Of a stretch of 64,000 nt of DNA, positions 6,701 to 58,791 are shown piece after piece; the first letter of the stretch is position 1; the number at the start of each line of letters is the position of its first letter. The notes under the pieces were generated by a model. The model had not been told where the DNA came from. It saw only the letters and a list, made by a program, of their open reading frames with translations, and searched no databases. The stretch is from Ruditapes philippinarum. Lineage: Eukaryota. A program made the translations under genes and the position numbers. The stretch is taken from the NCBI RefSeq assembly GCF_026571515.1, contig NW_026851725.1, positions 1 through 64,000 of the forward strand, given 5' to 3'.

Positions 6701-9700
6701 AAAATGGCAAGGGAAATGTGGTAAAAAAACATTTAAAATTGTATTTTAAAGAAATTTTGACTTAAGTTCCATAACAACAACGTAAAATTTAAACCCTTAT
6801 TATAAAACTAGACTTACCCCAGGTAAGAGATATGCAAACAAGAATAGAAAGTAGGAGAGATGATAAGATCAACCAGAGCCATGTATCACCTACATCAAAA
6901 ATAAATAAGCCCGTCTTATTAATGAAATTTTAGAGTAAATAATGGAAAGTATCATACAAGTATCTGTAAAACACCATTTGAACAAATCTGTAAAGCATAA
7001 ATCAAACTAAACTTATAATAAGATAAATGTACTAGCATGCTTTATTACAATTAAGTTATAGATGAACATAAAGCTGTGAGTAATTGCTTGTCAAATTATT
7101 GTCTACTTATTAAACCTTATGCTCATTCATGAATAAGGTGGATGAAAAATTGTAAGAAAAATTTTTTTTAAAACATTTTAAAAATATATTTAAAATTAAG
7201 AAATTTGGCTTTTGTTTTTGTTATTTGGAATATAAGCTGCAAAAAACACTAAATTAAAAAAGTGGCAATTTTTTAAGTTTTCCGGTAGAGAATCTTCAAA
7301 CCCCTAGGAAACCCAAAGTTTAAAATATGGCATTGGCAACAGACTGCCCTACTTTAGTGCCTGTATCTGATTGGGTTTTTCGCATCAGGGAAAGGGTATA
7401 GATACTGAAATAATAAGAAATGACCATGCCCTATAATTAATTATATCTGCATCAGGAATGGTGTATAGATACTGAAAAATATAGAAAATGACAATCCCTA
7501 TAATACTATTATCTGCATCATGGAATGGGGTATAGATACCCGGGAAAAATATTAAAAACAGACAATGCCCCTTAAAATTACTATTATTCGGTTAAAAGGG
7601 AGGTAATAATAATTCTGATATAATTTTTTGCTAGAGTGTTAAACCTTGTCACATATGATGTGGTTGATGACGAAGCAACTTATATTTAAAGTTTGAAGAA
7701 AATACCCTTAAGAAATAAAGAACTTAATAGTGAAAAAACTTAAAAACTAGAATCAGAAATCTTGAAATTCAGTATATTTGTTGCCAATAGCAACCAGAAT
7801 TTTTCAACATAGGAAGATAAAAAAAAGGATGTGCATAATTTCCATTACTGCCATCTACCCATATGTCAAGTTTCATAAAACATATTTCAGTACTTTTCGT
7901 GTTATCACTGGATCCAGGTTTTGTGTAAAATTTGCCATATTTTTCAGACTATTTGTTGCCATAAGCAAACCAGAATTTTCAACATAGGAAGAAAAGAAAA
8001 AGACGTGCATAATCTCCATACTGCCATCTATCCATATATCAAGTTTCATAAAAATATTTTCAGTACTTTTTGCGTTATCGCGGGATCCAGGTTATGTGTA
8101 AAATTTGCCATATTTTCAGTCTATTTGTTGCCATAGCAACCAGAATTTTCAACATAGGAAGAAAAGAAAAAGACGTGCATAATCTCCATACTGTCATCTA
8201 TCCATATATCAAGTTTCATTAAAATATTTTCAGTACTTTTTGCGTTATCGCGGGATCCAGTTTTGTGGACGGACGGACTGACGGACGGACAGACGGAAGG
8301 ACTGACGGACAGACGGACGGAGGGTAAACCTAAAGTCCCCTCCGGTAAACCGGTAGGGGACTAACAAGCAGGGTCAAAATGGACGGAAACTTGAACCTAC
8401 CTTATAACATCTGAATTTATATAAGAGTAGTAGTATCATAGTCATCACTATGACAACGCCCAGTAAAATCATGGCATTGGCAACAGACTGCCATACTTTA
8501 GTGCCTGTATCTGCATCTGGTTTATCTGCATCATTGGAATGGTGTATAGATACTGAAATAATATAGAACATGACCATGCCCTATAATTACTATTATATCT
8601 GCATCATGGAATGGTGTATAGATACTGAAAATAATATAGAACATGACAATGCCCCTATAATTACTATGGTATATTCTCTGCATCATGGAATGGTGTATAG
8701 ATACTGGAAAAATATATATAGAACATGACAATGCCCCTATAATTACTATTATATCTGCAATCATGGAATGGTGTATAGATACTGAAATAATATAGAACAT
8801 GACAATGCCCCTATAATTACTATCATATCTGCATCATGGAATGGTGTATAGATACTGAAATAATATAGAACATGACAATGCCCCTATAATTACTATTATA
8901 TCTGCATCATGGAATGGTGTATAGATACTGAAATAATATAGAACATGACAATGCCCCTATAAATTACTATATATATCTGCATCATGGAATGGTGTATAGA
9001 TACTGAAATAATATAGAACATGACAATGCCCCTATAATTACTATTATATTCTGCATCATGGAATGGTGTATAGATACTGGAAAAATATATAGAACATGAC
9101 AAATGCCCCCATAAATTACTATTATATCTGCATCATGGAATGGTGTATAGATACTGGAATAATATAGAACATGACAATGCCCCTATAATTACTATCATAT
9201 CTGCATCATGGAATGGTGTATAGATACTGAAATAATATAGAACATGACAATGCCCCTATATTTACTATTATAATCTGCATCATGGAATGGTGTATAGATA
9301 CTGAATAATATAGAAACACGACAATGCCCTATAATTACTATTATATCTGCATCATGGAATGGTGTATAGATACTGAAATAATATAGAACATGACAATGCC
9401 CCTATATTTACTATTATATCTGCATCATGGAATGGTGTATAGATACTGAAATAATATAGAACATGACAATGCCCCTATAATTACTTTTGCAACAGTCATG
9501 CAACTTACCAAAACATTATTGAAACATAAGAATATCTACAGAAAATGCATAACTAAGAAATGTAATTAGATAGTAAATTTAGTATTCCAAGTTTGAAATG
9601 AATATCTTTGATTGTTTGTTTGTTTGTTCGTTTCATTTTACGCCTTTTTCCAACAGTATTTCAGTCATATAGGCGGGTAGTTTCCTAACCATCATTCCTG

Positions 9701-47250: not shown

Positions 47251-50200
47251 CTATGTATCTTGACTCATGGACATTGCTATAGCCTGCTTTAACATCTCCT
47301 CTTCTGACAACTCTGCAAGGAAAGAAAATTTAATGATTATAAGGTATTTGTGAATATAATCTAGAGAAACAAAAAAGTTATTTTACTTCTTAAAATTGTT
47401 AACTTTTTAAATACTATAGGGTTGTAAAGCCTAATCTAGGGTTTTTAGAAATCAGTCAAGAAATTGTTGGCATCATGACATGAATCATAGCAAAGTACAT
47501 GTATCTAATTTGAAAGAAAGACTAGTGAATAAAACTAGTGCATCAGGTGGGAACTTAATTTAAAAAAAAAATTCTAATGTTTAGAAACTTTTTTGTTGTG
47601 TATAACTCTTACTTATTGGTCAAGATGTATTACTAATAATGTCTACTAAACATGCCATGATCTGTATCAAATCAGTCAATGATTGTTCAGCATTATAGAC
47701 GTGTTGCTTTTTAAAAAGGAAACATAACGATTTTATTCTATGAACAGACAATATAAATATCTGTTGAACTAAACATCACAACACAATAAACAAACATGCT
47801 GTGAAAACTGTTCAGAAATGACTATGAGAAAACTTATGACATACAGAAGAATACATTGTAATATAGTTTTACACCCTTTGACAATCGTAACGAAGCAAGT
47901 TTAAACAATGACATATGGGAATATACACACTGCATTTGTATAATTATAATGATGGTTTATTTAAGTCACCTGGAACCATTCAAAGGTTCCCTGATCATTA
48001 CTCATTTCTTACCAGGCTTTACATGATATGAATTAAACATTCATACATACATAAAACACACCTATTTCTTGGTAATATGTAAGCACACTAAAAGGCTATG
48101 TCTTTTTCAAAAGGTAAAGGCTATATAGTGACAAGCCTGATTTGCTTATAGAGGAATACCTCAGGTGTCACTCTGATCATTGATTCAGGCACCAAATGCA
48201 CATAAGTCGAACCACTGACTTTCCTCATACTAGCTTAATAGCTTCATCGTATGACAGAATCAAAAGCCCGTGACAGGATTAGAGAGAGAGAGACAGGGAG
48301 ACATGTGACTCACAATCAATAACCTTAACCATACCATCATCATGTTAAATATATGCCCCACATATGATACTGGATAAAAAGTTTGCAATCCCCATTTTAA
48401 TTAAACATATCTCCATGTGATGATGAGAGCATATCTTACAAAGTTATTTCTTTACCTGAAACTTCAGTCTCTGTATTTGTTCCATTCACTGTCACATCTG
48501 ATGGGTTATCACAGGAACAATTCTCTTTGGTATCCTTGTCTTGATTTTGTTCACTAGAGTCTGTCTGACTGCCTAGTTTACTTAAAAAAGCTAGTCTTTT
48601 TTGTCTCATTTCATCTGCATCTGGCTTTTCAACTTCTGCTAGTTCATGTGACTGATCTGTGGTGCCACCTAGCTTATAACCTGATGTACTCTCCTCTTGA
48701 TTACTTTTATCAGTATTTGTGCTAGGTTTATCTTGTGCAGTTGAAGTGGACGGACCTGAACTAGATTCCCCAGAATGACATGCGGTCTCAATTCTGCTAA
48801 CAGACTCCTCTATATAACCTGTATATAAAATAATCATCAATTTTGTGTGAACGTATTTTTAAACAAATGCTGTCAGTAGGATAATATGCTCCACTTTCAT
48901 CACAGCATGAATAATGTATTAACAGAAAAGGACGGTTTCATTGAAATTTCATAGCTATAAGCTTGGAAATTGACATACAATTATGATCCAAAAAACTTAA
49001 ATATTAGTTTATCTGTTTAAATGGGTATGGTCAATTTTTAACTAAAAACTGGTTAGAGAATTCAATTACCTGTCAGGTTAGTATTTGACAAAAAGTAAAA
49101 AAAAAGTTTTAAATTGATTCTAAATATTACCTTAGTTTTTTTTTATATAAAGATATGACAATTTTTTTTCCGATATGATCAAGGATGGTACAGCCGCTCT
49201 AACAGAAAATAGTTGTTCCTTATTCAAATATGTATTGTAATACTACACCAAAATATGAACAAAATGTCATATCTCAATTGTCATAAAGAAAAATATTAGT
49301 GATTATGACAAAACCTGTGGTAGTAGTAACTTAATTCATGTTTTACACATCATTTCAATTTTACTTAATCCAGAGGATAATCAATACATATAATACAGAC
49401 ATTCAAAGCCAAAATAAATCACTTGTTACCTAGCAACATAAAACAATAATAATGATAGAGCATTAGAATACTTTTCTTGACTGCTTTATCACTTGTAATA
49501 ACACATATTATGTGATATTTTACAATATAGCAAAAAGTGTTACCATGAGCAAACATTTTTATTGATTTTGGTACTAAATGGACTCATTTGCTGAAAACTA
49601 TCAACTTTATTCTATGCACTTTGCCATCCTTTTAATTTTTAAGCAATTTTTAGAGAAATTTTTGCACTTCTCAAACACTTTGTAAGTGAGTAACAAAATT
49701 CAAGGACTTTAAAAGACTTTTTTATCCACTTTTCAAGAAACTGTCTCAATTTTAAGCCCTTCTTAAAATTGTAGGCACTGAGGAATGTGATAGTATCAGA
49801 TTTATGAATTGTTTGTCTAATTACCTTCCATACTCATCTGAAATTGTTTATCTAATTACATTCCATTCTCATCTGTAATTGTTTATCTAATTACCTTCCA
49901 TACTCATCTGTAATTGTTTATCTAATTACCTTCCATACTCATCTGTAATTGTTTATCTAATTACCTTCCATACTCATCTGTAATTGTTTATCTAATTACC
50001 TTCCATACTCATCTGTAATTGTTTATCTAATTACCATCCATACTCATCTGTAAAATTATTGAAATAATTACCTTCCATACTCATCTGCAGAGCTCGTTGT
50101 AAGGAGACATCATCTGATTCTATCATACTTTTGCTTTCCTGCAGAGCCTTTTCTACCTCTGGGTCTTCCTCCCGCCCTCCAGTTCCACCTGAAGCCCCGC

Positions 50201-53200
50201 CTTTTCCAGCTCGTGATTGCACATTATCTGTTATAAGCTGTGGTTTGATTGGCTGAACAGCCGGACAGAGGCGGAGCAACTGATCTGCTTCACATTCTGA
50301 CAGATCCCCGATCACAATGAATATTGAGTATCCTAAAGGTAATATTATCGTCATAAAATTCCTTCATACTTTCAGGATACAAGTTCTTCATAAAAAATAT
50401 AAGCTATCTTAAAAACTTATATAACAGAATATAGGTGTTTTTTGTACTTCAATAGCACAACTATTGGCAACAAAAAGATGATCATAGCCGATTGTATATT
50501 AAATCTCTGTCTGGTACTTAATAGATCTGTGATTTTGTATCTATTTAATCTTTGTATCAATATTATCATCATTAAACTATTCCTAGAAATGCTACAGGAT
50601 CATTATACAACACTTTCCTAAACTCATTTCATATGAACTGAAAACTTGTGTAAGATCCTTAATAAAGTAAGTTTGAAAGTATTATTAACTTTTTATCAGG
50701 GATAAAACATGTAAATTAATGTATTTACCATCTTGTTGTAGCTGTGTTAGGAACATGTTCAGATATGTATCAGATATAAGTTCAGGACCCGTCAGTAGTG
50801 AGTTCAAGTTAAACCACTGATTTCCTATCTTACGTACAGTCAGCCAGTGCTCGCCAAAATTACAGATGTATGACAGCATCCGTCTGAAAACATATGTAAA
50901 TGTATACAAACACATAAATACATTTAAACCAGGGCTAGCCAAATCTGATTTTTACTTACTTGTCCAGTGTTACCTGTATCATTTATTTACTTGTCTGTAT
51001 GATATTTATAGGGTAAATTCTTGAAAAATTCATTTGCCCCAACAAAATCGATTAATTATGATGCATTGTTTACACATTATCTCACACTTTCATCCAAATA
51101 TGTATACTAATCCTGACTTGCTTTGAAATTGAAACTGTTTGTTGTTATTTTAAGAAGTATAGAAATCAGAAATAAGATATATGTAACATGTAATTGTCTG
51201 ATATCTACCAGGCCATACAGATGTCTCTCTTATAGAAGCCAAAAGGCTCAAGATAAGAACATTACATTGTCTTATAGAAACCAACACCTGAAGGGCTCAA
51301 AATAAAAACACTACATCATGTTTTTCATTTTTATCTGAGGCAACAGATGTGTTAACTTAAACACAGAATTTGCCAGAGATCAAGGGGATATTTTAATCTA
51401 CAGGTTAAAAACAGGTTTACACAGCAGTTAATCAATGATATGGACCTCCAATCTTTTAATAATCAAAAGCCAGCTACATATTTTATCATTTATTCCCGGC
51501 CTCATATTTTATCATACATTTCAATAAAAAAAAGTATGCATAAATGAAATTACATCTGAAAGTTTTGGTCCATTAATGAAATAATTTAAACTTGTAATAC
51601 ACTAAACAAAATAAAATAGGGGTCAATAATATATTTTAGGGTATTTTGATAATAACTTTATATTTTAATCTAAATATATCACTTTCACCTTGTGCACCCA
51701 TGTACTGTTAGCAACGAGATTTTATAACCATGAAAATATCGAAAAATCCGTGCAAAACGCTCATAAAGACATGTACCTTCAAAAATTGCATTGAAAATGA
51801 AGATATCATATCCAACCTGATTGTTATGTCTTTATACCGCTGGAGTTTTAACACAGGTTCTTGTTTTCTGTGCTTCAAATTTAATTACCTTTATCACAAA
51901 ATATGCCGAGGAGGCACCTGACTCGAGATGAGGCTGCACAAGCCCTCGGACGTTTGCTAGCAGGCCAAAGTCAGCGTCAAGTGGCACAGGCCCACAACAC
52001 CAATCAAAGCGTCATTCAGCGGTTATGGACAAGGTACCTAGCCACCAGATCTGCATTTAGACGAACAGGAAGCGGTCGTTTGAGGGCAACATCTGCCCGA
52101 AACAACCGTGCAATGGTAGTAATGGCGAAACGGAAATGTTTTGATTCTGCTGTTTCATTGAATAGAGATTTTGCAAGGGCAACAAATGTGAATATTTCTG
52201 TTCAAACGTATAGAAATAGACTTCATGAGGCTAATTTACGCGCTCGGAGGCCAACTGTACGTGTACCACTCACTCCAAGACATCGTGTTAATCGATTGGC
52301 GTTTGCACGTGATCACCAGAATTTGAGGCTGCGTCAGTTTAGACACATTTTGTTCACAGATGAATCAAAATTCTGCTTGGACTTCCATGATGGTCGGCGA
52401 CATGTCTGGCGGCAACGTAATGAGCGTTTTAGAGACTGTTGTATAGTTGAACATGACCAATGGGGAAGCGGCTCAGTTATGGTTTGGGCTGGCATCTCTT
52501 ACGATGGGCGCACGGACCTACATGTGTTTATGAATGGCTCTGTTACCGGTCAACGTTATAGGGATGAGATACTCGCACAATATGTTGTTCCTTACGCTGG
52601 TGCTGTAGGTCAGGAATTTATTCTTATGGACGATAATGCCACTGCACACCGCGCCAGAATCGTAAACGCTTTTCTCGATGAACAAGGAATCGAGCGGATG
52701 TACTGGCCAGCACGGTCTCCAGACTTTAATCCTTTGGAACATGCATGGGACATTCTGCAGAGGCGAGTTAAAGCCCGGATTCCACAACCGTCAACAAGAA
52801 TTGAGCTCGCCAACGCTCTTGTTCAGGAATGGGCACTGGTACCACTTGCTGACATCCGTACACTTATCAGGAGCTTTCCAACCCGTATTCAGGAATTGAT
52901 CAGGGCTAGGGGAGGTCACACTCACTATTGAGGCAATTTCTACGACAGAAACTTGACACTTTAAAATCTTTTACCCCACCCATAACCTTAATTAAAGACA
53001 TTTTGGACACCGTGAACCTAAGTCATGGATTAAATGGAATACTTTTGTTTTTGCATCGAAATGTGTCAGTAGATAATGGATTTACTAATGTATAAACTTC
53101 AACAAATGTAAAATAATATGTTCATATTAAATATGCATATAATTTGTATGACCCCTATTTTATTTTGTTGAGTATATTTTAAAGTGAAAATTTAAAAACA

Positions 53201-56200
53201 TCTGCAGGAATAATTCATCTGAACAACAATTTATGGAATAGTTACAGTCCATTTAGATACATAAGTGTGCTTCAATATGAATGGTCTATGTAAAAATATA
53301 AACCAAACATGTACTTACGTTGGATCAGCACGAGCCTCCTTCGCTATGTAGTTTTGTGAGGTATATGATATAAGCTCCAGTCCCATCACACTTAATGCTT
53401 TATCTATCACTTGTACAGAAAAGAACCCGCTGTCATCAAAATTATTGGACGGTTGCTGTAAAAAAACAAAACAGGACACCTGTTAAATATCTCATTGGAG
53501 CACTGATACATGTACATGAAAGTTATGTAAGTTTAGAATAACACATGCATATTATTTATTAATACTGCCATCCCATTATATGGCACCCTATTTTAACTGT
53601 CGTGGCTCATCCAGGAGGGTTGTTCTGGCAAAACCTTTCTGTGTATAACAATTTCGCTCTCCCGATATATCAGAGAGAAGTCATTTGCCAAATCCCAATA
53701 TATCCAAGAAAAGTCAAGTTCACCAGAAAAATTGAGTCCAAATTAAAGTTTACTCAGCAATGATTATGTCATGTAGAATTTCAGTATCTAAATAAATGTG
53801 GACTACTAACATTAGCCAATCATAGCTTCATGAAAAAAAATCTTATTTTTAATTGATCACAAGACTGCATCTTTATAACTTGTGCTTTATCATGTTTTAT
53901 ACATTCACATAGTTACAGGTGAACAAAAATATTTTCTAAAACAATATTATTTACTTATTTCAAATAATATGATGATGAGGGTTTTATGTCAGAACCTCAA
54001 TTTATATCACGGTTATATAACGACTTATTAAGACCAAAAGCCCAAATTTGAGCATTATACAGTAATAGCCCCTATTCAAATTATATGTACATGTATACCT
54101 GGCATTCCAGAACTAGAATGAGGCTTAATTGTCATGAATGTTATTAAGTAAACACACTGAATACTCTTATCTTGTAAAACATATTGCTTGAATGTCTAAT
54201 GTTTAAATTGTCATTGTTGTGTGCCTGTGTGCAATTTTGATGCTAGATATCATTCCACAACTTAACATACATGTATGCTGCTTTTTTTTACAATTTATTA
54301 ATATTTTATAGGATAAACAAATGATAAAAACAATTACAAAACATGACAATTTTGCTTTTTACACTATTCACAGATGGTCTTTAACACAGGTTAGACTGTA
54401 TTACATAGAAGAAACCACAGAAGCTGGAAAAATAAAGCTGCTTCATAAAAAATGTTAAAAGTCAGTCATTGTGTTATGTGTACCTTTATAAAATGCTGAT
54501 ACCCCTCTGTTTCTGTACCCCCCTCTGCCATTTGCTGTCTTTCTGACTCATCTAGCTGTCTACCAATGTCTGCTAGATCTACAGCAGAGAAATATGGACC
54601 TTGAAGCAGTGCATTCAGACAATGCTGAGCACATAGTGATCCTTCTTGCTGAAAGAAGAAAAAGAATTTAATATCAAATTACCATGGTAGTCTTGAGTCA
54701 CTCTATTACAATAGCCATTTCAGACTTCTCACCAACAAGTTTCTTTTTATATAAAATTGTGCATTTTATGTATATATTTGGTGACAGGGTTTCCACTTAA
54801 GTTACAAAGGTTTTCTGTCTTTCTGATGCAGGTTTTTGGTTGCAGAACATTTTCCACCAGGGGTTTATCCCAAGGACTCAAAAAATCAGCGTATATCCCA
54901 TTAAGGACCCCCAAAATCAGCAACAGTTTCATAATTTCCATTCCTCAACAGCCAATGATTTTGGTAATTTTGTATGAATAAAATTAGATTTTTTGTATCA
55001 TTTATGCACTTTCTCTATCAAAATACCCTTGTTTACAAGCTCCACATGTTATTTCTAAGACGAATGTCCCTGAAATATAAGCCTTGTAAAAATAAGAAGC
55101 TTCTTATTGCAATGGGTTTATAATATTAGTTTAAATACTTCACAACAAAATTAGGGGGGGATTTTATATTGTTGAATATCTTATAGTTAATATCATTCAG
55201 AAGCACTGGCACATTTTTTGTGCTAGGCAAATAAAGCAGATTTCAAATACTGTGTACTCAAGTTTATCAATGGGACTTCATGTACTTAGAATGTAATATT
55301 TATGCAAGTTACTGGGACTATCATTTTGTGCTAGAAGACAGATATATCTAGGGTAAACATATTACTAAGAAAAAGTTTTGGCTAACTGGACAGGTAAATA
55401 CACCTAGTCAATTCTTTAATAGTACTTAAGCAGGAATCATTCAACAGGTCTAGTATATCGCAGGTGCATGATGCACATATTGGTATATAATACACAAATT
55501 GATGTATTTAATCATAGTGATACACTGATTTGTGAATAAAAATTTTGATAATTGCGTTTCTGTAAATAATTAATGGTTTATTTATAATCATGTTTTGGCA
55601 CCTGCACATAACATTGGTAATAGTCTGTTTTATTGACAAAGAAGAAACATAACTTCTGATCTACATGAACTCCAGGAGATTTTAATGTTTTCATCCACTG
55701 AAAAATTGTAACTTTCAGACATAAATTCATTTCCATATTTCATATCTAGTTATTATTCTGATCAGGTATACTCAGTCTTAAAATTGTCTCTTGACTGGAA
55801 AGTAAAATAATAACCACTTCCAATTTTTGGTTATTAGTGTATCATGCAGATTTTTTTTTTAAAAAGTGCAAGAATTGCCAGTGTTTACACCAATATCTTT
55901 AGTTTTAAGATATTTCTATGAATATTATCTATAGTAAGTGCGGTGCCACTATTCACACTGCTATATTATCAAAATAATGGGTCTTCAAAAATTTGAATGA
56001 TAGTCTGGTACATCAATTGGTGCATCACAAAATACACCAATTACTGCATCATACACATACTGGTGCTTCATGCACTTATTTGGTGATATATACTAGTCCA
56101 ATAGATTAGACGTTACAGGCTTGTTATAGTTTTATGTTGGTCAAGCCTGACGTCTAATAGTTATTGCTCAAAAACGCGTAGCATTTTGAAAATTAAAAAA

Positions 56201-58634: not shown

Positions 58635-58791
58635 NNNNNNNNNNNNNNNNNNNNNNNNNNNNNNNNNNNNNNNNNNNNNNNNNNNNNNNNNNNNNNNNNN
58701 NNNNNNNNNNNNNNNNNNNNNNNNNNNNNNNNNNNNNNNNNNNNNNNNNNNNNNNNNNNNNNNNNNNNNNNNNNNNNNNNNNNNNNNNNNN
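58635..58791. other. Assembly gap (N run)
   Basis: About 157 N characters. Confidence 1.

What the first reader, a model, noticed from the sequence alone, without database searches (positions are those of the whole stretch)
49808..50087. Seven extra splice donors trailing the UIM2 exon of ataxin-3, each also shaped like a microexon
The unit copies the exon end (QMSMEG codons) and donor; five copies keep AAG|GTAATT exactly. Most units also read ttacAG-ATGAGTATGGAAG-GTaatt, a 13-nt cassette bounded by AG and GT. Read-through past the true donor gives ..MEGNYFNNFTDEYGW*, a product lacking the VCP-binding motif and UIM3, or an NMD target. This region is otherwise error-free, so an artefact is less likely than for PSEN.
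Basis: partly seen in the sequence, partly recalled or inferred. Interest (0 to 1): 0.78.

Follow-up and report, generated by a model that had tools for sequence, protein, structure and literature searches.

The report
Splice-donor minisatellite in clam ataxin-3 intron
The end of one exon of a clam ataxin-3 gene and its splice donor really are repeated seven more times at the start of the next intron, but this is a known kind of repeat and the assembled transcripts use only the first, genuine donor.

Summary
On the minus strand, the ataxin-3-like exon 50332..50072 ends in AAG|GTAATT. Seven more copies of its last 16 bases plus the donor follow: 35-nt unit, 8 copies, 49807-50087.

The array occurs only once in the 1.41-Gb assembly. 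Its two edges are also present in DNA contigs of another sample.

The exons match the public protein 'ataxin-3-like [Ruditapes philippinarum]' at 100% on two exons. That protein reads across the first donor. Two RNA contig sets also join the first donor to the acceptor at 48819. No transcript or protein on record uses a later donor. Any later donor would meet a stop codon.

This is a junction-spanning minisatellite, a known kind:
- Amphioxus 'mirages' (PMC3087553).
- The human F7 intron-7 37-bp VNTR, where only the most upstream donor is used (PMC1557585).

Earlier follow-ups of this scan reached the same reading for other arrays in this genome (for example s1-810597, s1-808180).

Minor or NMD-degraded use of the extra donors was not testable. 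The only raw-read run behaved like GATC-ligated DNA, not mRNA.

Verdict: new member of a known kind, low interest.

The parts
50072..50332 (-). Ataxin-3-like exon that ends the Josephin domain and carries two UIM-like stretches; it ends ..LQRALQMSMEG.
   Evidence: RNA contig joints at both ends in X15 and X19. tblastn of P0120 residues 153-248. Pfam UIM hit is weak, 17.2 bits against a cut-off of 21.
50070..50071 (-). Authentic 5' splice site GT, in the context AAG|GTAATT.
   Evidence: Joint 48816/50070 'cut +2', skipping 1253 nt, ends CT..AC on the + strand, in 1 contig each of X15 and X19. Context.
49807..50087 (-). Junction-spanning minisatellite of 8 units (37 + 7 x 35 nt). Each unit is the last 16 nt of the exon plus the donor and about 19 nt of intron.
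   Evidence: Unique in the assembly.
49824..50034 (-). Span holding the seven pseudo-donors. The G of each GT is at 50034, 49999, 49964, 49929, 49894, 49859 and 49824.
   Evidence: No joint from any of them in any of the 4 runs laid.
48819..50071 (-). Intron of 1253 nt. It begins with the array and holds a high-copy repeat fragment near 49028-49209.
   Evidence: joints and depth tables.
48457..48818 (-). Next exon (YIEESVSRIE...ETEVS). It carries the ..EMRQKRLAFL.. stretch and ends at a CAG|GTAAAG donor.
   Evidence: tblastn of P0120 residues 248-368 at 100%. Sequence. X15 contig has a loose end at 48456.
47254..47319 (-). Last coding exon piece with the C-terminal UIM (..LSEEEMLKQAIAMSMSQDT in P0120).
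   Evidence: tblastn of P0120 residues 367-388.
50729..50883 (-). Upstream Josephin exon.
   Evidence: Joint 50331/50728 'cut +1' in X15 and X19, and X15 record 6. Pfam Josephin E 1.4e-19.

Best explanation
This is a junction-spanning minisatellite: a 'mirage', of the same type as the human F7 IVS7 VNTR.

Origin (inferred): a short tandem duplication covered the last 16 nt of the exon, the 5' splice site and about 19 nt of intron. It then expanded by slippage or unequal exchange to 8 units. The inner units stay identical through continuing exchange, and the edge units drift. In the first unit only the exonic half is held constant, by selection on the protein.

Why it is tolerated (shown at the level of assembled transcripts; mechanism inferred from the F7 experiments): the splicing machinery commits to the most upstream donor, so all later copies are removed as ordinary intron. 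The extra donors are therefore silent pseudo-sites, or at most minor ones. The array has no demonstrated function. Any slip to a later donor gives a stop-containing transcript.
For: Structure:
- 35-nt x 8 array whose first unit holds the real exon end and donor.
- Units 3-6 are identical. Units 2, 7 and 8 carry 1-4 changes. Unit 1 is unchanged in its 16 exonic nt but diverged in its intronic half. PMC3087553 (passages of section 16) describes this same pattern for mirages: homogenised centre, excluded boundaries.
- The unit is found at 1 place in the 1.41-Gb assembly, so it is a local duplication and not a dispersed element.
- DNA contigs of another sample (X5) carry both edges of the array.

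Splicing:
- The first donor is joined to the 48819 acceptor in 2 of 2 RNA contig sets, X15 and X19.
- The only public protein of this species among the hits (P0120, a cluster of 1) reads ..QMSMEG|YIEESV...

Precedent:
- Human F7 IVS7 has a 37-bp VNTR with 5-9 repeats whose first monomer spans the exon-intron boundary. Only the most upstream donor is used, and the pseudo-sites are functional only when the upstream ones are mutated (PMC1557585: abstract, Introduction, Results section 6, Discussion).
- Amphioxus mirages do not disturb normal splicing (PMC3087553, PMC3902484 passages).
Against: - The RNA evidence is contigs only, at word depth 4-8. Contigs drop rare variants, and NMD would hide unproductive isoforms, so use of pseudo-donors below perhaps a quarter of transcripts (my rough estimate, not computed in any call) is not excluded.
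- The one raw-read run was uninformative.
- In two human cases (the 6-16 gene and CBS) the two nearest pseudo-sites are used (PMC1557585 Introduction), so silence is not guaranteed.
- Copy-number polymorphism, expected for a minisatellite, was not tested.
- No orthologous intron could be read.
Confidence: 0.8

Rival explanations
1. One reading: the extra donors are really used. Part of the pre-mRNA is spliced from a later donor. That would give either a stop-containing NMD target or a truncated Josephin-UIM1-UIM2 protein, so that copy number tunes ataxin-3 output.
For: - 5 of the 7 pseudo-donors are identical to the real one over -3..+6.
- In the human 6-16 and CBS genes the two nearest pseudo-sites are used (PMC1557585 Introduction).
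- NMD would hide such products from the low-depth contigs.
Against: - No joint from any pseudo-donor in the 4 runs laid.
- No RNA contig covers 49392-50028 in X15 or X19.
- No truncated isoform among the hits.
- In F7 identical pseudo-sites stay silent even when strengthened to a consensus value of 91 (PMC1557585).
- The nearest pseudo-donor (unit 2) is weakened to ATG|GT.
Confidence: 0.12
2. Assembly artefact: the array, or its copy number, was created by mis-assembly of reads.
For: Tandem repeats are error-prone in assemblies. The central four identical units cannot be checked with short-read contigs. A follow-up on another array of this genome reported corrupted sequence next to it (s1-810597, not checked here).
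Against: - X5 contigs from another sample and study carry 50006-50338 (units 1, 2 and the start of 3; all 4 differences listed lie in the exon) and 49493-49845 (flank plus unit 8).
- The variant units 2, 7 and 8 are distinct, which a simple stutter would not give.
- Summed word depth in the array bins is 28-37 against 8-18 beside it. The tool itself warns that this is not a copy number.
Confidence: 0.04
3. The units act as 13-nt microexon cassettes, or as a pad of U1-binding sites that strengthens a weak donor or suppresses premature polyadenylation.
For: - Every extra unit has AG + 13 nt + GT.
- The real donor lacks the consensus G at +5 (consensus MAG|guragu as quoted in PMC1557585).
Against: - Cassettes are 22 nt apart, and the first AG is 24 nt from the real donor. 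That is too short for an intron (from general knowledge, recalled).
- Pyrimidines in the 20 nt before the AG are 8 of 20 in units 3-7 and 9 of 20 in unit 8, against 11-12 of 20 at the real acceptors. Unit 2 has 12 of 20.
- 13 nt shifts the frame into a stop (frames).
- No RNA contig contains them.
- No special RNA structure: z = +0.62, and 67 of 100 shuffles fold at least as well.
- The U1-pad idea has no test here.
Confidence: 0.04

Closest known systems
Human F7 intron-7 37-bp VNTR (Borensztajn et al. 2006, PMC1557585)
   Same: The first monomer spans the exon-intron boundary, so the donor is reiterated in the intron. The unit size is almost the same (37 bp against 35-37). Copy number is similar (5-9 against 8). 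Normal mRNA uses only the most upstream donor.
   Different: The F7 monomer holds only 4 exonic bp, against 16 here. F7 polymorphism and pseudo-site competence were shown by experiment; here neither was tested. The gene and phylum differ.
Amphioxus 'mirages' (Adh3, globins BflGb6 and BflGb9, TnC, PGBD5; PMC3087553, PMC3902484; original paper Canestro et al. 2002 not held)
   Same: Minisatellite-like tandem duplication of an exon-intron boundary. Both 5' and 3' boundaries occur. Regular splicing is not disturbed. Inner units are homogenised and boundary units excluded. Reported Adh3 units are 10-72 bp.
   Different: They were described in cephalochordates. My searches of the held library found no paper describing them in molluscs. 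Somatic and allelic instability was shown there but not tested here.
Human 6-16 (interferon-inducible) and CBS intron-13 minisatellites (as summarised in the PMC1557585 Introduction)
   Same: Reiterated donors after the authentic one.
   Different: There the two nearest pseudo-sites are used as well as the authentic donor. Here no such use was seen, and the nearest pseudo-donor carries a -2 change (ATG|GT).
Intron gain by tandem duplication of an AG|GT proto-splice site (Rogers' model, as discussed in PMC3087553 section 16)
   Same: A local duplication creates extra AG and GT signals that could in principle define new exon-intron structure.
   Different: No new intron or exon is seen here. All copies lie inside one existing intron.

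Membership tests
Junction-spanning minisatellite ('mirage' / F7-IVS7 type) | Head-to-tail tandem array of short units (tens of bp) | tested here: met
   Period 35, 8.0 copies, 94% matches; spacings 37, 35 x 6.
Junction-spanning minisatellite ('mirage' / F7-IVS7 type) | The edge unit contains an authentic exon-intron boundary, so the splice site is reiterated inside the intron | tested here: met
   The exon end at 50072 is proven by RNA contig joints and the P0120 alignment. There are 7 further GTAATT copies.
Junction-spanning minisatellite ('mirage' / F7-IVS7 type) | Normal mRNA uses the outermost (authentic) site only | tested here: inconclusive
   Met at the level of assembled contigs (2 of 2 RNA sets) and of the public protein model. 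Minor isoforms are not testable because the raw-read run was uninformative.
Junction-spanning minisatellite ('mirage' / F7-IVS7 type) | Concerted evolution: inner units homogenised, boundary units divergent | tested here: met
   Units 3-6 are identical. Units 1, 2, 7 and 8 carry the differences.
Junction-spanning minisatellite ('mirage' / F7-IVS7 type) | Allelic length polymorphism or instability | not testable with these tools
   Short-read contigs collapse the identical inner units. Only one copy of the locus exists in the assembly.
Ataxin-3 (Josephin domain plus UIMs) | Josephin domain followed by ubiquitin-interacting motifs | tested here: met
   Pfam Josephin E 1.4e-19 on the 50685-50942 ORF. 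UIM scores 17.2 bits, below the cut-off of 21, on the exon peptide alone. The exons match P0120 'ataxin-3-like [Ruditapes philippinarum]', which has precomputed PF02099 and PF02809, at 100% on two exons.
Regulated alternative 5' splice-site use / unproductive splicing coupled to NMD | Junction reads from the alternative donors; stop-containing isoforms that rise when NMD is blocked | tested here: inconclusive
   0 joints from pseudo-donors in the 4 runs, but sensitivity is low. NMD block is not testable here.
Microexon cassette | Flanking introns of workable length, a pyrimidine tract, and inclusion in RNA | tested here: not met
   Spacing is 22 nt. Pyrimidines are 8 of 20 (units 3-7) and 9 of 20 (unit 8) against 11-12 of 20 at the real acceptors; unit 2 has 12 of 20 but is 24 nt from the donor. 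No RNA contig holds a cassette.

The most novel reading that the evidence does not exclude
The clam's many junction minisatellites may not be neutral debris. Under this reading, the ataxin-3 pseudo-donors are used at a rate that depends on copy number. That would shunt part of the pre-mRNA into stop-containing transcripts, or into a Josephin-UIM1-UIM2-only protein, so that array length acts as a heritable dial on ataxin-3 output. The abundance of such arrays in this genome would then reflect a process that preferentially amplifies splice junctions.
Probability: 0.08. Interest if true: 0.6.

Novelty: new member of a known kind. Interest (0 to 1): 0.22.

Why it matters
By itself it matters little. 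It adds one small donor-type 'mirage' in a conserved deubiquitinase gene of a bivalve.

Its use is as one more data point. Exon-junction minisatellites, so far described in amphioxus and in a few human genes, appear to be frequent in the Manila clam genome. A second one sits in front of a presenilin exon in the same window, and earlier notes of this scan list many more.

If that frequency holds up, clams would be a natural system for two questions:
- How the spliceosome picks one of several identical splice sites.
- Whether such repeats seed new introns.

For annotation, the point is practical: gene predictors should take the first donor and not be misled by the copies.

Tried and rejected
1. 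Dispersed satellite or transposon origin of the unit: rejected. The 280-nt array matches 1 place in the 1.41-Gb assembly. The caveat is that this search skips very common words.

2. Pseudo-donors masked by RNA hairpins. I noticed a 6-nt inverted repeat around each cassette. Rejected: MFE -44.8 against a shuffle mean of -47.05, z = +0.62, and 67 of 100 shuffles fold at least as well.

3. Same array in metagenome contigs: 0 matches to one 35-nt unit.

ORF fragments of other species that run past the same exon end were read (24 and 11 proteins). None of those that read on past the exon end shows the clam's repeat-derived peptide. The nearest ones, P0107-P0109, continue for only 1-15 residues. That is too short to exclude an array.

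5. Truncated or read-through isoforms in the protein collection: none among the 120 best hits or. P0120 is a cluster of one. This is weak evidence, since only proteins of 0.55-1.75 times the query length are candidates.

6. Raw RNA reads (X24) were uninformative.
- 99 reads were laid, and 90 of them only partly.
- No joints were listed.
- Introns were covered as well as exons.
- Depth was zero at 49392-50119, which lies inside the one GATC-free stretch (sites at 49177 and 50282).
- 8 reads have a loose end exactly at the GATC of 50282-50285.
I read this as ligation-type DNA reads, whatever the library label says.

7. Copy number from depth: not claimed. The tool states that summed word depth is not a copy number.

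The exon peptide, the raw ORF and public proteins were used instead. In one search the downstream exon was translated frame by frame without joining.

9. Supplementary files of the papers were not opened. Additional files 4-6 of PMC3087553 (unit alignments and trees) might refine the comparison.

Full report
WHAT IS THERE

The window is AT-rich animal DNA, about 27-40% G+C in 2-kb bins. On the minus strand lies a gene whose exons match the public protein P0120, 'ataxin-3-like [Ruditapes philippinarum]', 388 aa. Identity is 100% over residues 248-368 (48819..48457) and 10-63 (54645..54484), and 94-96% over alignments that run slightly past two other exons. Pfam finds Josephin (E 1.4e-19) on the ORF at 50685-50942. 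It finds a sub-threshold UIM (17.2 bits, cut-off 21) at the end of the exon in question. By that protein's name, the window is from the Manila clam or something extremely close to it. Two RNA runs that hold parts of the stretch are labelled 'mollusc metagenome'.

The exon runs 50332..50072 and ends ..LQRALQMSMEG, with donor AAG|GTAATT. From 50087 down to 49808 the last 16 exonic bases, the donor and about 19 intronic bases are repeated head to tail:
- Period 35, 8.0 copies, 94% matches.
- Anchors at 50087, 50050, 50015, 49980, 49945, 49910, 49875 and 49840.
- Units 3-6 are identical.
- Unit 2 has ATG|GT.
- Unit 7 has AAT|GT and one more change.
- Unit 8 has changes in its intronic part.
- Unit 1 is unchanged in the exonic 16 nt but diverged, and 2 nt longer, in its intronic half.

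The 9-mer across the donor occurs 9 times in the window, 6 of them in the array, against 1.75 expected; 0 of 100 shuffles reach 9.

IS IT REAL DNA?

The 280-nt array matches only this place in the 1.41-Gb assembly of 15,874 contigs. It is therefore not a dispersed satellite or transposon piece.

In DNA contigs of a different sample and study (X5), one 333-nt contig covers 50006-50338. That is the exon, units 1 and 2, and the first bases of unit 3. All four differences listed for it lie in the exon. A 356-nt contig covers 49493-49845, which is the flank and unit 8.

So the two ends of the array, with their private variants, exist independently of this assembly. The number of identical inner units cannot be checked with short-read contigs. 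Summed word depth is higher in the array bins (28-37 against 8-18), but the tool warns that this is not a copy number.

WHICH DONOR IS USED?

Two RNA contig sets each hold one contig that joins 50072 to 48818. X19 is labelled RNA-Seq. X15 is guessed to be RNA and is shown to be spliced by its joints. The skipped stretch is 1253 nt, GT..AG on the gene strand, at word depth 7.68 and 4.27. Each set also holds one contig that removes the upstream intron, 50333-50728. Neither has any contig over 49392-50028.

The public protein reads ..QMSMEG|YIEESVSR.., which is the same junction. It is the only protein of this species among the best 120 hits, and it is a cluster of one. No truncated form was seen.

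The one raw-read run (X24, labelled RNA-Seq cDNA) gave no joints. Of its 99 laid reads, 90 fit only partly, and it covers introns as much as exons. Its coverage gap at 49392-50119 falls inside the only long stretch without a GATC site (sites at 49177 and 50282). Eight of its reads break exactly at the GATC of 50282-50285. I take these to be ligation-type DNA reads, so this run says nothing about splicing.

The first donor is therefore the main one. Minor use of the others, or use followed by decay, remains untested.

WHAT WOULD THE OTHER DONORS GIVE?

They would add 37, 72, 107, 142, 177, 212 or 247 nt.
- An in-frame TAA lies in unit 2, so donors 3-8 all give ..DEYGW*.
- Donor 2 shifts the frame and stops after six more codons in the next exon (frame 1).
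- A 13-nt cassette also shifts the frame.

All these stops lie upstream of at least one further exon junction. That junction is the donor at 48457/48456, seen as a loose end of the X15 contig and as CAG|GTAAAG. Such transcripts would be candidates for nonsense-mediated decay (inference).

As microexons the cassettes are implausible:
- They are 22 nt apart, and the first AG is only 24 nt from the real donor.
- The 20 nt before their AG hold 8 pyrimidines in units 3-7 and 9 in unit 8, against 11-12 at the two real acceptors. Unit 2 holds 12.

The array RNA is not unusually structured (z = +0.62).

WHAT IT IS

A lead from earlier notes of this scan pointed to amphioxus 'mirages', and I checked the papers. 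Ebner et al. 2010 (PMC3087553; I read the abstract passage, passages of section 16, the legends of Figures 6-7 and reference entries 68-70) report the following:
- They cite the Adh3 gene (units 10-72 bp) and other loci.
- They state that both 5' and 3' boundaries can be duplicated, and that regular splicing is not disturbed.
- They report that alleles differ in copy number, that inner units are homogenised, and that cluster boundaries are excluded.

Pavelitz et al. 2013 (PMC3902484; one passage read) say the same of the Adh, TnC and PGBD5 genes. The original paper (Canestro et al. 2002) is not held, and I know it only through these citations.

My own search found Borensztajn et al. 2006 (PMC1557585; abstract, Introduction, Results section 6 and Discussion read). 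Its points that bear on this array:
- The human F7 gene has a 37-bp VNTR in intron 7 whose first monomer spans the exon 7-intron 7 boundary.
- It has 5-9 repeats, and only the most upstream donor is used.
- The pseudo-sites become active one after another when the upstream ones are mutated.
- The authors argue for 5'-to-3' oriented selection.
- Their Introduction lists further human cases: 6-16, CBS, LMNB2 and PDGF. In two of them the two nearest pseudo-sites are also used.

The clam array fits this class feature by feature (see the membership table). The exception is polymorphism, which I could not test.

MECHANISM (BEST READING)

- Shown: a local tandem repeat that includes the splice junction, and use of the first donor in assembled transcripts.
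- Inferred: origin by duplication and slippage or unequal exchange.
- Inferred: tolerance because the spliceosome commits to the first donor, so the copies are simply intron.
- Inferred: homogenisation of the inner units and drift at the edges, with protein-level selection holding the exonic half of unit 1.
- Speculative (recalled knowledge, not tested): the first unit's intronic half is richer in T than the other units. U-rich tracts just downstream of a donor can help U1 recruitment.

HOW NEW

This is a new member of a known kind. Searches of the held library for the term together with molluscs, or for the clam's name with tandem repeats and splice sites, gave no paper describing such arrays in molluscs.

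The scan has already noted many such arrays in this same genome. Follow-ups s1-793113, s1-805752, s1-803757, s1-803783, s1-808180 and s1-810597 reached the same class. I did not re-examine their DNA.

The same window holds a 73-nt x 12.9 array next to a presenilin exon (note s1-810614). With 7 extra copies, the ataxin-3 array is a small example.

LIMITS

- There were no informative raw RNA reads.
- No allele survey was possible.
- Supplements of the papers were not opened.

Noticed in passing
window 8523-9485 (also 7382-7539): A 73-nt x 12.9 tandem array (93% matches) lies directly upstream, on the minus strand, of a presenilin-like exon ORF (8374-8577). Its units share peptide words with the start of that ORF. 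This is a second junction-type array in the same 64 kb. Incidentally, the amphioxus presenilin locus is one of the loci cited for such repeats in PMC3087553 (reference 70; reference entry only seen).
   Followed up: partly
window 51903-52931 (+): An uninterrupted 342-aa Tc1/mariner-type transposase ORF (Pfam DDE_3 E 6.8e-18, HTH_Tnp_Tc3_2 E 1.7e-14) sits inside an ataxin-3 intron, on the opposite strand.
   Followed up: partly
window 49028-49209: A short stretch of the same intron has very high summed depth (381-491 in DNA contigs, 41-103 in X15). Many reads break off at 49100-49143. It is a high-copy interspersed repeat fragment.
   Followed up: no
window 50282-50285 and run X24: The run labelled RNA-Seq cDNA behaves here like GATC-ligation DNA. 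Coverage tracks GATC sites, 8 reads break at a GATC, introns are covered and there are no spliced reads. It should not be used as expression evidence on this locus.
   Followed up: partly
protein P0021 (another species; DNA not seen): An ORF fragment running past the orthologous exon end (..AMSMQG) continues with a 17-residue tandem repeat (two near-identical copies and a third degenerate one). Its unit end resembles the exon end. It may be an independent junction-adjacent minisatellite in the same intron of a distant animal.
   Followed up: no
window 48456-48457 and 47254-47319: The ORF that seems to end the protein at ..GKEITL* is cut by a CAG|GTAAAG donor at 48457/48456. The X15 contig and P0120 continue into a last small exon carrying the C-terminal UIM.
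   Followed up: partly
window 58635-58791: A run of 157 N (gap or masked). It was left untouched.
   Followed up: no
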